This document shows, piece by piece, positions 31,573-31,776 of a stretch of DNA of 44,602 nt. This DNA comes from Ginglymostoma cirratum (taxonomy: Eukaryota). A program made the position numbers and the translations under genes. The notes beneath the pieces were generated by a model, which made no database searches, was not told the origin of the DNA, and worked only from the letters and a program-made list of their open reading frames with translations. The number at the start of each line of letters is the position of its first letter. Within the stretch, counting starts at the first letter, position 1. The DNA is taken from the NCBI GenBank assembly GCA_024137785.1, contig JAHRHZ010000028.1, forward strand, positions 27,693,847-27,738,448, in the 5' to 3' direction.

Positions 31573-31694
31573 GATAAAGTGGGCCACTGTGTTTATGGTT
31601 CTAATATGCATTCAAAATATTCACAACAAGTAGAATTCCAGCTAGATGTTTATAGTTAAATGGAGGGATCAGCCACTCACCAGCTTTTCTTGAC

Positions 31695-31776
31695 CTATAT
31701 CTTCACTTTGATTAAAATGGCACAAAGGAGCAGAATAACAAAGAAAGCCCAGCGTAAAATATTCCATCTATTTTGC
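31695..31776 (-). CDS. Gene B TM/short-tail exon (R-QNRWNILRWAFFVILLLCAILIKVKI*), activating-type
   Basis: Pyrimidine-rich acceptor tttgtctttcatctacttatag. Phase 2 matches the stalk exon. Hydrophobic helix with an Arg near its N-terminus, TAG at 31697-31695, consensus donor CTG|GTGAGT 14 nt after the stop (exon end 31681). Confidence 0.8.

What the first reader, a model, noticed from the sequence alone, without database searches (positions are those of the whole stretch)
31681..31776. Hidden TM exon with N-I-L-R motif: CD300-type ectodomain on an FcR-gamma-style activating anchor
Seen: splice phases link V, stalk and this exon to give ...KVHENRKIFPNDEEKQRQNRWNILRWAFFVILLLCAILIKVKI*, with a tail of about 4 residues and no Tyr motif. 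Established: an Arg at the start of the TM in an N-L-(I/L/V)-R context mediates FcR-gamma/CD3-zeta pairing in FcalphaRI, GPVI, OSCAR, LILRA and NKp46. Mammalian activating CD300s instead use a mid-membrane Lys or Glu. Inference: gene B is an activating receptor combining a CD300/pIgR V domain with an LRC-style adaptor interface. I recall similar W..LRW..F helices in fish CMRF35-like proteins but cannot verify this here.
Basis: partly seen in the sequence, partly recalled or inferred. Interest (0 to 1): 0.75.

Follow-up and report, generated by a model that had tools for sequence, protein, structure and literature searches.

The report
Shark CD300-like activating receptor exon
This is a real, spliced exon that gives a shark CD300-like immune receptor a membrane anchor with a buried arginine and almost no tail, the mark of an activating receptor, but the anchor is a type shared by many fish relatives rather than a borrowed mammalian-style one.

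Summary
Observation confirmed. On the minus strand, V exon 36579-36244, stalk exon 35955-35919 and exon 31776-31681 join in frame. One public-run contig (X15, depth 230) carries exactly the joints 36244>35955 and 35919>31776. The exon encodes QNRWNILRWAFFVILLLCAILIKVKI, then a stop 14 nt before a GTGAGT donor.

Interpretation partly supported. A buried Arg, a 4-residue tail and no Tyr motif fit an adaptor-coupled activating receptor. Its V exon is 96.7% identical to that of neighbouring gene A, which looks like an inhibitory CMRF35-like-1 gene. So this looks like a paired receptor with a gene-converted ligand-binding exon.

The "LRC-style NxxR anchor" is not supported. The helix belongs to a fish CD300-like type, W-x-x-x-R-W, found in 33 segments in 32 of 265 fetched relatives (sharks, rays, chimaera, sturgeons, teleosts). 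The best match is a Stegostoma protein, 18/26. At R-3 these relatives have Ser (18) and only rarely Asn (3). The other published LRC features (DYT motif, acidic C-end) are absent.

The adaptor (FcRgamma/zeta type or DAP12 type) is untested. The leader exon of gene B was not found, so a complete protein is not shown.

This is a new member of a known kind, of modest interest.

The parts
36244..36579 (-). V exon of gene B (CD300/pIgR-type V-set domain, 336 nt, enters in phase 1 and leaves with 1 nt)
   Evidence: PF07686, E 2.8e-14. X15 contig with 0 mismatches over 36244-36571. 86% identical to Rhincodon CMRF35-like molecule 1.
35919..35955 (-). Stalk micro-exon (37 nt; RKIFPNDEEKQ plus two split codons)
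   Evidence: Joints on both sides in the X15 contig. The stalk resembles the Chiloscyllium punctatum model P0002 (EKIILNDKERQ).
31681..31776 (-). Transmembrane exon. Coding 31776-31698, stop 31697-31695, 14 nt of 3' UTR. It is an internal exon.
31752..31754 (-). Codon CGC for the membrane-embedded Arg (inside W-N-I-L-R-W)
   Evidence: This Arg is invariant in all 33 related helices.
31675..31680 (-). Donor GTGAGT after the TM exon. It splices to an unidentified 3' exon.
   Evidence: The X15 591-nt contig leaves the genome at about 31677-31681.
1338..1673 (-). V exon of paralogue gene A: 325/336 nt identical to gene B's, with 6 synonymous and 5 replacement codon differences
989..1027 (-). Stalk exon of gene A (GRKGYTKDKERLR), the type seen in inhibitory CMRF35-like molecule 1 proteins
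6393..6434 (-). Leader exon of gene A (MSITVLLPIVFLS plus 1 nt)
   Evidence: 12 of 13 identical to the Rhincodon CMRF35-like 1 leader.

Best explanation
Exon 31776-31681 is the real transmembrane exon of a shark CD300/CMRF35-like gene (gene B).

Shown:
- It is spliced V > stalk > TM.
- The protein ends four residues after the helix.
- The helix is a family-typical W-x-x-x-R-W helix. It is shared with the short 'CMRF35-like molecule 2/3/5/7' proteins of sharks, rays and a chimaera, and with sturgeon and teleost CD300/pIgR-like proteins.
- Gene B carries this old stalk and TM scaffold together with a V exon that is 96.7% identical to the V exon of the neighbouring gene A. Gene A has the leader and stalk of the ITIM-bearing CMRF35-like-1 lineage.

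Inferred:
- A and B form an inhibitory/activating pair whose ligand-binding exon is kept alike by gene conversion.
- Gene B signals by docking its outer-leaflet Arg onto the Asp pair of a dimeric ITAM adaptor, which then recruits a Syk-type kinase.
- Which adaptor is used (FcRgamma/CD3zeta type or DAP12/DAP10 type) cannot be told from the sequence.
- The N-x-x-R spelling is a one-residue variant (Ser to Asn) of the family helix. It is not an LRC module.
For: - Splicing: X15 contigs.
- Helix family: 33 W-x-x-x-R-W segments in 32 of 265 fetched proteins. Best match is Stegostoma CMRF35-like 2 (P0173) at 18/26, then Heterodontus 16/26 and Heptranchias 15/26. tblastn E 5e-9 to 3e-6.
- Of the 25 chondrichthyan proteins I counted's list, read: 10 have this helix with a 1-4 residue tail, 11 have an uncharged TM or an ITIM tail, and 4 models have no TM.
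- Arg geometry: 4 uncharged residues before it and 14 after. The family range is 2-17 before (mode 5) and 14-22 after.
- V tree: gene A and gene B V domains are sisters (93/84) inside the elasmobranch CMRF35-like-1 clade (97/96), apart from the V domains of the short Arg-helix proteins. Gene B's V is only 43-52% identical to those.
- V exon 325/336 nt identical, against about 65% in the stalk exon and outer flanks. The high-identity tract is 537 nt at 90.7%.
- Precedent: human CD300A/CD300C show gene conversion of the ectodomain, and CD300C signals via a charged TM residue and FcRgamma (PMC12447643, passages).
Against: - No leader exon for gene B was found on the minus strand between 36600 and 44602. 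A complete secreted or membrane protein is therefore not shown.
- Spliced evidence comes from 1 of 4 runs, and that run's library kind is not on record. The polyA raw-read run X21 showed no gene B joint and only gene A letters on the V exon.
- Gene A's TM and ITIM exons lie outside the window.
- Gene B lacks the aromatic/hydrophobic turn that precedes the first Trp in shark relatives (usually Y-Y-F-I; Ile at W-1 in 21 of 33). It has Q-N-R there, which could weaken membrane insertion or adaptor docking.
- No adaptor association was or could be tested.
Confidence: 0.7

Rival explanations
1. The helix is an LRC-type N-L-(I/L/V)-R module (as in FcalphaRI, GPVI, OSCAR, LILRA, NKp46) joined to a CD300 V domain, and it therefore pairs specifically with FcRgamma.
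For: - The literal motif N-I-L-R lies at the outer end of the helix.
- NxxR helices confer FcRgamma association in LRC receptors, and in Xenopus also in FCRL and CD2/SLAM-like receptors, so the module has moved between families (PMC2413239 and PMC4536121, passages).
- Arg near the outer end is the depth usually linked with FcRgamma/zeta (recalled, not from a call).
Against: - Asn at R-3 occurs in only 3 of 33 related helices; Ser is the rule (18 of 33).
- The DYT motif and the acidic C-end that accompany NxxR in the LRC subtype (PMC6557307, passage) are absent. The C-end is basic (K-V-K-I).
- The conserved Trp residues flanking the Arg are not among the features that passage lists for the LRC subtype.
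- No paper holds both 'CD300' and 'NxxR'.
- I could not fetch LRC helices with the tools, so no direct alignment was made.
Confidence: 0.12
2. Same activating architecture, but the partner is a DAP12/DAP10-type adaptor rather than FcRgamma/CD3zeta.
For: - Fish literature cites Dap12 as the example adaptor for receptors with an intramembrane charged residue, and marks TM Arg in bowfin DICPs and NITRs as 'potential activating' (bioRxiv 10.1101/2021.06.11.448072, passages).
- In shark relatives the aromatic N-terminal extension places the Arg 8-13 residues into the uncharged stretch. That is nearer mid-membrane.
Against: - In gene B, and in 12 of 33 relatives, the Arg lies only 4-5 residues from the upstream charged residue. 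That is an outer-leaflet position.
- Mammalian CD300 members with a charged TM residue read about here (CD300C, LMIR8) use FcRgamma.
Confidence: 0.25
3. Gene B is a transcribed but decaying copy. Its original leader exon is lost or disabled, so no membrane protein is made.
For: - No usable leader was found.
- A leader-like fragment lies inverted on the + strand at 38573-38600.
- An 'MD...LYFLCSI' ORF at 39562-39496 (-) resembles activating-lineage leaders, but its expected donor reads GA, not GT.
- The helix has lost its N-terminal hydrophobic turn.
Against: - V, stalk and TM exons are all open, and the splice sites are canonical and used.
- Exonic contig depth is 136-230, against 5-11 for intronic contigs in X15.
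- The stop lies 14 nt before the last seen junction, so nonsense-mediated decay is not expected.
- V exon differences from gene A are 6 synonymous to 5 replacement codons, with no frameshift.
- The leader may simply lie beyond 44602.
Confidence: 0.12
4. The C-terminal hydrophobic stretch is a GPI-attachment signal, or an adaptor-independent anchor of a decoy receptor.
For: There is a short C-terminal hydrophobic segment with almost no tail.
Against: - The Arg and both Trp residues are invariant across chimaera, sharks, rays, sturgeons and teleosts. That is not expected for a cleaved signal.
- The basic K-x-K end is the usual stop-transfer flank.
- Some relatives carry the same helix followed by tails of 24 to more than 300 residues.
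Confidence: 0.04

Closest known systems
Predicted short 'CMRF35-like molecule 2/3/5/7' proteins of cartilaginous fishes (P0173 Stegostoma tigrinum, P0172 Heterodontus francisci, P0170 Heptranchias perlo, P0111 Mustelus asterias, P0180 Hemitrygon akajei, P0164 Callorhinchus milii)
   Same: One CD300-type V domain, a short stalk with a ...E-x-x-R-Q... end, a W-x-I-L-R-W-x-F-F helix, and a 1-4 residue basic tail ending K-L-K-I or similar. Gene B's TM exon is 18/26 identical to P0173.
   Different: Gene B's V domain is only 43-52% identical to theirs and belongs to the CMRF35-like-1 (ITIM) clade. Gene B also lacks the Y-Y-F-I turn before the first Trp. None of the 9 fetched proteins with 65% or more V identity to gene B has this helix.
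Human CD300A / CD300C paired receptors
   Same: An inhibitory ITIM receptor and a short-tailed partner with a charged TM residue. The roughly 112-residue ectodomains are kept alike by gene conversion (PMC12447643, passages).
   Different: CD300C uses a Glu (E191) and a different helix. The fish helix uses Arg flanked by Trp. None of the tetrapod hits whose C-termini I printed has the W-x-x-x-R-W helix.
LRC-type NxxR transmembrane subtype (LILRA2, PIR-A, NKp46, GPVI, OSCAR, FcalphaR; Xenopus XFL 'TM1')
   Same: Arg near the N-terminal end of the helix, with Asn three residues before it in gene B, and a short tail. For this subtype FcRgamma association has been shown (PMC2413239, passages).
   Different: There is no DYT motif, and the C-end is basic instead of acidic (PMC6557307, passage). 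The Asn is not conserved among gene B's relatives (3 of 33).
Skate MDIR and ray-finned-fish DICP / PIGRL families (CD300/pIgR-like multigene families with inhibitory, activating and secreted forms)
   Same: The same broad kind: CD300/pIgR-type V domains, with ITIM forms and forms carrying a charged TM residue, Arg in bowfin DICPs. MDIRs are cited as CD300-like in PMC3031540 (passage).
   Different: Those have one to several mixed domains, whereas gene B is a single-V form. The MDIR paper (Cannon et al. 2006, PMC3701310) is not held, so I could not compare helices.

Membership tests
CD300 / CMRF35-like (pIgR-type V) family | V-set Ig domain with the family's four cysteines and the YWCG signature | tested here: met
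   PF07686, E 2.8e-14. The columns for the four Cys, the K-x-W-C-K-G stretch and Y-W-C-G-I are invariant in the 9-row alignment.
CD300 / CMRF35-like (pIgR-type V) family | Nearest relatives are family members | tested here: met
   Best named hits are CMRF35-like molecules of Rhincodon (86%), Stegostoma (81%) and Chiloscyllium (78-81%).
Adaptor-coupled activating immunoreceptor | Charged residue inside the transmembrane helix | tested here: met
   The Arg has 4 uncharged residues before it and 14 after. The 14 residues alone are too few for a helix without the Arg-containing turn.
Adaptor-coupled activating immunoreceptor | Short cytoplasmic tail without ITIM, ITAM or other Tyr motif | tested here: met
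   The tail is K-V-K-I followed by a stop. The transcript contig runs through the stop to the 31681 donor.
Adaptor-coupled activating immunoreceptor | Physical and functional association with an ITAM adaptor | not testable with these tools
   Needs co-expression and co-precipitation.
Adaptor-coupled activating immunoreceptor | Complete open reading frame with a signal peptide | tested here: inconclusive
   No leader exon was found in 36600-44602. It may lie beyond the window.
LRC-type NxxR transmembrane subtype | Asn three residues before the Arg, conserved | tested here: inconclusive
   Present in gene B, but in only 3 of 33 related helices.
LRC-type NxxR transmembrane subtype | [quoted passage not shown] | tested here: not met
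   The juxtamembrane region reads ...DEEKQ, a split-codon Arg, then QNR. There is no DYT.
LRC-type NxxR transmembrane subtype | [quoted passage not shown] | tested here: not met
   The C-end is K-V-K-I.
LRC-type NxxR transmembrane subtype | Overall sequence relatedness to LRC/XFL helices | not tested
   No tool gave me LRC helix sequences. A PDB sequence search with the 26-residue exon found 0 matches at E up to 10.
Fish CD300-like W-x-x-x-R-W helix group | Trp at R-4 and R+1, Phe at R+4, at least 14 uncharged residues after the Arg | tested here: met
   column counts: W 33/33, R 33/33, W 33/33, F 28/33. Gene B has all of them.
Fish CD300-like W-x-x-x-R-W helix group | Hydrophobic residue before the first Trp (Ile in 21 of 33; Y-Y-F-I in sharks) | tested here: not met
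   Gene B has Q-N-R before the Trp.
Paired inhibitory/activating receptors | Near-identical ectodomain shared with a linked ITIM-bearing gene | tested here: inconclusive
   The V exons are 96.7% identical and sisters in the tree. Gene A's leader and stalk match ITIM-bearing CMRF35-like 1 proteins. Its TM and tail exons lie outside the window.

The most novel reading that the evidence does not exclude
The W-x-x-x-R-W helix is an ancient adaptor-docking module of fish CD300/pIgR-like receptors that I did not find described. It is present from chimaeras to teleosts and absent from the tetrapod hits seen, and it is distinct from both the LRC NxxR helix and the mammalian CD300 Lys/Glu helices. Gene B would be a derived variant. 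Loss of the aromatic N-terminal turn and a Ser-to-Asn change move the Arg towards the outer leaflet. That could switch its adaptor preference relative to the canonical shark form, while gene conversion keeps its ligand specificity tied to the inhibitory neighbour.
Probability: 0.15. Interest if true: 0.6.

Novelty: new member of a known kind. Interest (0 to 1): 0.35.

Why it matters
It shows that the activating half of a paired CD300-like receptor system exists and is transcribed in a shark. It also shows the same trick seen in primate CD300A/CD300C: the ligand-binding exon is homogenised while the signalling scaffolds stay old and different.

It corrects a tempting but weak motif match to the LRC NxxR helix. 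In its place it points to a conserved Arg-between-two-Trp helix shared by cartilaginous and ray-finned fishes. That helix's adaptor partner has, as far as my searches went, not been determined.

It also suggests that the Chiloscyllium punctatum gene model P0002 lacks this TM exon, and that the Stegostoma model P0001 stops at a retained intron.

Tried and rejected
- TM-only searches. The search for homologous proteins on residues 130-173 of P0111 found only itself (1 hit among 9 candidates). The protein-atlas search on the TM part of P0173 gave no usable hit. The PDB sequence search with the 26-residue exon gave 0 matches at E up to 10.
- A strict NxxR-plus-hydrophobic pattern found 1 of 151 proteins (P0057). 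There the Asn belongs to a different register.
- Leader exon of gene B. tblastn with P0001 and P0002 and with 17 relatives' N-termini, a splice-aware ATG scan and sensitive blastn with gene A's leader region gave no convincing minus-strand leader.
- Inhibitory-type TM or ITIM exons downstream of gene B: none found with three inhibitory C-termini. So there is no sign of an alternative inhibitory isoform within the window.
- The weak TM-like hit at 3335-3318 lies in a sequence I read as retroelement-derived. I dismissed it.
- The first V tree used a frame-shifted gene B translation, my error by one base. I discarded it and rebuilt the tree.
- Papers. Cannon et al. 2006 (PMC3701310) and Cannon et al. 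2010 (PMC2823954) are not held. The search for 'MDIR' gave mostly unrelated uses of the acronym.
- The claim that I found no description of this helix rests only on searches. I saw listings, and passages only where named. I did not search for the motif string itself. Supplementary files were not consulted.
- Adaptor depth rules (Asp near the outer end in FcRgamma/zeta, mid-membrane in DAP12) are recalled, not from a call.

Full report
WHAT IS THERE

It has three exons I can place.

- V exon, 36579-36244. It is 336 nt, follows an AG at 36581-36580 and ends A|GTAAGG. Its 111 whole codons translate to a V-set Ig domain (PF07686, E 2.8e-14).
- Stalk micro-exon, 35955-35919. It is 37 nt and reads ACAG|ATCG...CAAAG|GTAAAT. 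It encodes RKIFPNDEEKQ between two split codons.
- Transmembrane exon, 31776-31681. After TTATAG| it reads G + 26 codons, QNRWNILRWAFFVILLLCAILIKVKI. Then come TAG at 31697-31695, 14 more bases and CTG|GTGAGT.

The last base of the V exon plus AT gives Asn, and AG plus G gives Arg.

IS THE EXON USED?

I asked for runs holding 35900-36600 and laid four of them on 30700-36650.

- Run X15 (kind not on record) holds a 393-nt contig at depth 230 that matches 36244-36571 without a mismatch. It carries two joints. One is 35955/36244 (skips 288). The other is 31775/35918 with the cut ambiguous by one place, i.e. 31776/35919 (skips 4142). Both have GT..AG ends on the minus strand.
- A second X15 contig (591 nt, depth 136) lies on 31778-31677 with only 102 of its letters. 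The transcript therefore runs through the stop codon and leaves the genome at the 31681 donor for a further exon I could not place.
- A third X15 contig (depth 11) is the unspliced intron-exon form. Intronic contigs have depth about 5-11.
- The stop is 14 nt before the junction, so nonsense-mediated decay is not expected.

Against this, the other three runs show no such joint. X22 laid only 9 reads. X21 (polyA, raw reads, about a quarter read) and X3 cover the V exon thinly. At every listed difference site that is an A/B diagnostic (10 of the 11 sites, 36272-36545) they carry the letters of the paralogue gene A; I checked each site. So gene B's transcript is seen in 1 of 4 runs, and gene A's in at least two others.

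IS IT MORE THAN CHANCE?

The C-terminal parts of five relatives hit 31766-31698 by tblastn with E 5e-9 to 3e-6 in the window.

WHAT KIND OF HELIX IS IT?

A sensitive search with the V exon (2379 proteins at E up to 0.001, best 150 listed) and a profile search (118 proteins at E up to 1e-5 among 4470 candidates) gave 265 proteins in all.

- 32 of them hold 33 segments of the form W-x-x-x-R-W followed by a hydrophobic stretch.
- Named members come from Callorhinchus, Heptranchias, Heterodontus, Stegostoma, Mustelus, Narcine, Amblyraja, Hemitrygon, Mobula and Leucoraja among cartilaginous fishes. They also come from the sturgeons Acipenser and Huso and from many teleosts (catfishes, characins, Electrophorus, Megalops, Alosa, Coilia).
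- The tetrapod hits whose C-termini I printed have no such helix.
- Column counts: Trp at R-4 33/33, Arg 33/33, Trp at R+1 33/33, Phe at R+4 28/33.
- Gene B's exon is closest to Stegostoma 'CMRF35-like molecule 2' (18/26), Heterodontus (16/26) and Heptranchias (15/26). It shares their ending K-[LV]-K-I followed by a stop.

This family helix, not an LRC module, is what the exon encodes.

TEST AGAINST THE LRC NxxR SUBTYPE

Guselnikov and colleagues define this subtype by NxxR at the N-terminal end. They show FcRgamma dependence for a Xenopus receptor that carries it, and note its use by LRC, FCRL and CD2/SLAM-like receptors (PMC2413239 and PMC4536121, passages). [quoted passage not shown]

Gene B has neither. 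EEKQ, a split-codon Arg and QNR precede the helix, and K-V-K-I follows it. With the Asn unconserved among relatives, I rate the NxxR match as a coincidence of a Ser/Asn-tolerant site. I could not align against real LRC helices because no tool supplied them. A PDB sequence search with the exon found nothing.

GEOMETRY

The Arg has 4 uncharged residues before it and 14 after, followed by the basic tail. Fourteen residues are too few to span a membrane, so the Arg turn must be embedded.

Among relatives the Arg lies 2-17 residues (mode 5) after the nearest upstream charge and 14-22 before the next. Shark relatives have an aromatic turn (mostly Y-Y-F-I) before the first Trp, and Ile occupies W-1 in 21 of 33. 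Gene B has Q-N-R there, so its helix is shorter and its Arg nearer the outer face.

THE GENE AS A WHOLE

A second V exon lies at 1673-1338 (gene A).

- It is 325/336 nt identical to gene B's, with 6 synonymous and 5 replacement codon differences. The replacements are at codons 79, 81, 94, 96 and 98.
- The stalk exons and outer flanks are only about 65% alike. The high-identity tract found by blastn is 537 nt at 90.7%.
- Gene A's leader (6434-6393) and stalk (1027-989, GRKGYTKDKERLR) match the CMRF35-like molecule 1 proteins of Rhincodon and others. Those proteins carry an uncharged helix and ITIM-type motifs. Gene A's own TM and tail exons lie beyond the window.
- In a V-domain tree, gene A and gene B are sisters (93/84) inside the elasmobranch CMRF35-like-1 clade (97/96). 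They sit apart from the V domains of the short Arg-helix proteins, to which gene B's V is only 43-52% identical.
- The two Chiloscyllium punctatum models pair in the same species-wise way (83/79). One of them (P0002) has a B-like stalk (EKIILNDKERQ) but no TM in its model.

I read this as an old activating scaffold (stalk and TM related to the CMRF35-like-2 lineage) whose V exon is repeatedly converted by the neighbouring inhibitory gene. The same pattern is described for primate CD300A/CD300C (PMC12447643, passages). None of the 9 fetched proteins with 65% or more V identity carries the Arg helix, so this combination is not represented among the models I saw.

HOW IT LIKELY WORKS

Shown: splicing, helix type, tail, and V-exon identity with gene A.

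Inferred: the Arg docks onto the paired Asp residues of a disulfide-linked ITAM adaptor dimer, and ligand binding by the V domain then signals through a Syk-type kinase, opposing gene A.

Which adaptor is open.
- For FcRgamma/zeta: the outer-leaflet position of the Arg (a recalled rule), and the fact that the mammalian CD300 members read about here, CD300C (Glu) and LMIR8 (Lys), use FcRgamma.
- For DAP12: it is the adaptor named for Arg-bearing fish receptors, and the Arg sits deeper in canonical shark relatives.

CAVEATS

- I did not find gene B's leader exon.
- Two relics lie upstream. One is a leader-like fragment inverted on the + strand at 38573-38600. The other is an 'MD...LYFLCSI' ORF at 39562-39496 on the right strand, but its expected donor reads GA.
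- The leader may lie beyond 44602, or the gene may be decaying.

COMPARISON AND NOVELTY

This is a member of the CD300/CMRF35-like family and of its fish Arg-helix subgroup. It has the architecture of an activating paired receptor. It is not a member of the LRC NxxR subtype.

Activating, inhibitory and secreted CD300/pIgR-like forms are known in skate (MDIR; cited in PMC3031540; the original paper is not held) and in ray-finned fishes (DICP). Relatives with this helix are already predicted in many shark and ray genomes.

I found no paper holding both 'CD300' and 'NxxR', and none in searches that describes this helix or its adaptor. Those searches were limited and supplements were closed.

Earlier notes of this scan on the same region describe the paired V exons and an ITIM receptor at gene A. 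I used them as leads and tested the V-exon part myself.

VERDICT

The LRC/FcRgamma-specific reading is not supported. This is a sound, fairly ordinary member of a known kind, with a modestly interesting conserved helix behind it.

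Noticed in passing
window 38573-38600 (+): A fragment resembling the 3' half of gene A's leader exon plus its donor (...ATTGTTTTTCTTTCAG|GTAAGAAGG) lies inverted relative to gene B, 2 kb upstream of its V exon. The matching ATG is followed at once by TAA, so it looks like a decayed, inverted leader.
   Followed up: partly
window 40574-40681 (+): An ORF ending ...FVFTMHIVKWHSFALFFLWSLCVA, then a stop, aligns with the family helix of four relatives (E 0.002-0.04, composition correction off). 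It has Lys in place of Arg. It may be a relic TM exon of an inverted copy, or a chance hydrophobic match beside a repeat.
   Followed up: partly
window 39496-39562 (-): The ORF MDIDVVFSHKNSFTLYFLCSIT resembles the MDF..F..LYF.IS leaders of the Arg-helix lineage (E 0.05, one of 17 queries). The position where a phase-1 GT donor is expected reads GA. It may be gene B's disabled ancestral leader.
   Followed up: partly
window 7260-7299 (-): After an acceptor TTTAG, the sequence encodes SCQLQFFTLALPK. This matches the last 13 residues of the Chiloscyllium punctatum model P0002 (E 0.018). It lies 24 kb downstream of gene B's TM exon and 0.8 kb upstream of gene A's leader. It could be a 3' exon of gene B or a 5' exon of gene A.
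   Followed up: no
window 36272-36545 (V exon), runs X21 and X3: At the 10 A/B diagnostic sites listed in 36272-36545, reads of X21 and a 906-nt contig of X3 carry gene A's letters, while X15 carries gene B's. The two paralogues therefore seem to be expressed in different samples.
   Followed up: partly
window 920-1024 (-) and 35917-35921 (-): Reading through the stalk donors gives an immediate stop (AGG TAA). The Stegostoma isoform X2 model P0001, which ends ...DKERLR without a TM, therefore looks like an intron-retention form.
   Followed up: partly
window 30700-31500, 33300-33700, 34100-34500: These are interspersed repeats with very high read and contig depth in all runs (up to about 2500 reads per bin in X21). 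Copies recur at 29079-29424, 41186-41374 and 4613-4930. They produce many spurious joints in the read table.
   Followed up: no
window 16204-16603: A run of 400 N (assembly gap or masked) lies between gene B and gene A. It was left untouched.
   Followed up: no
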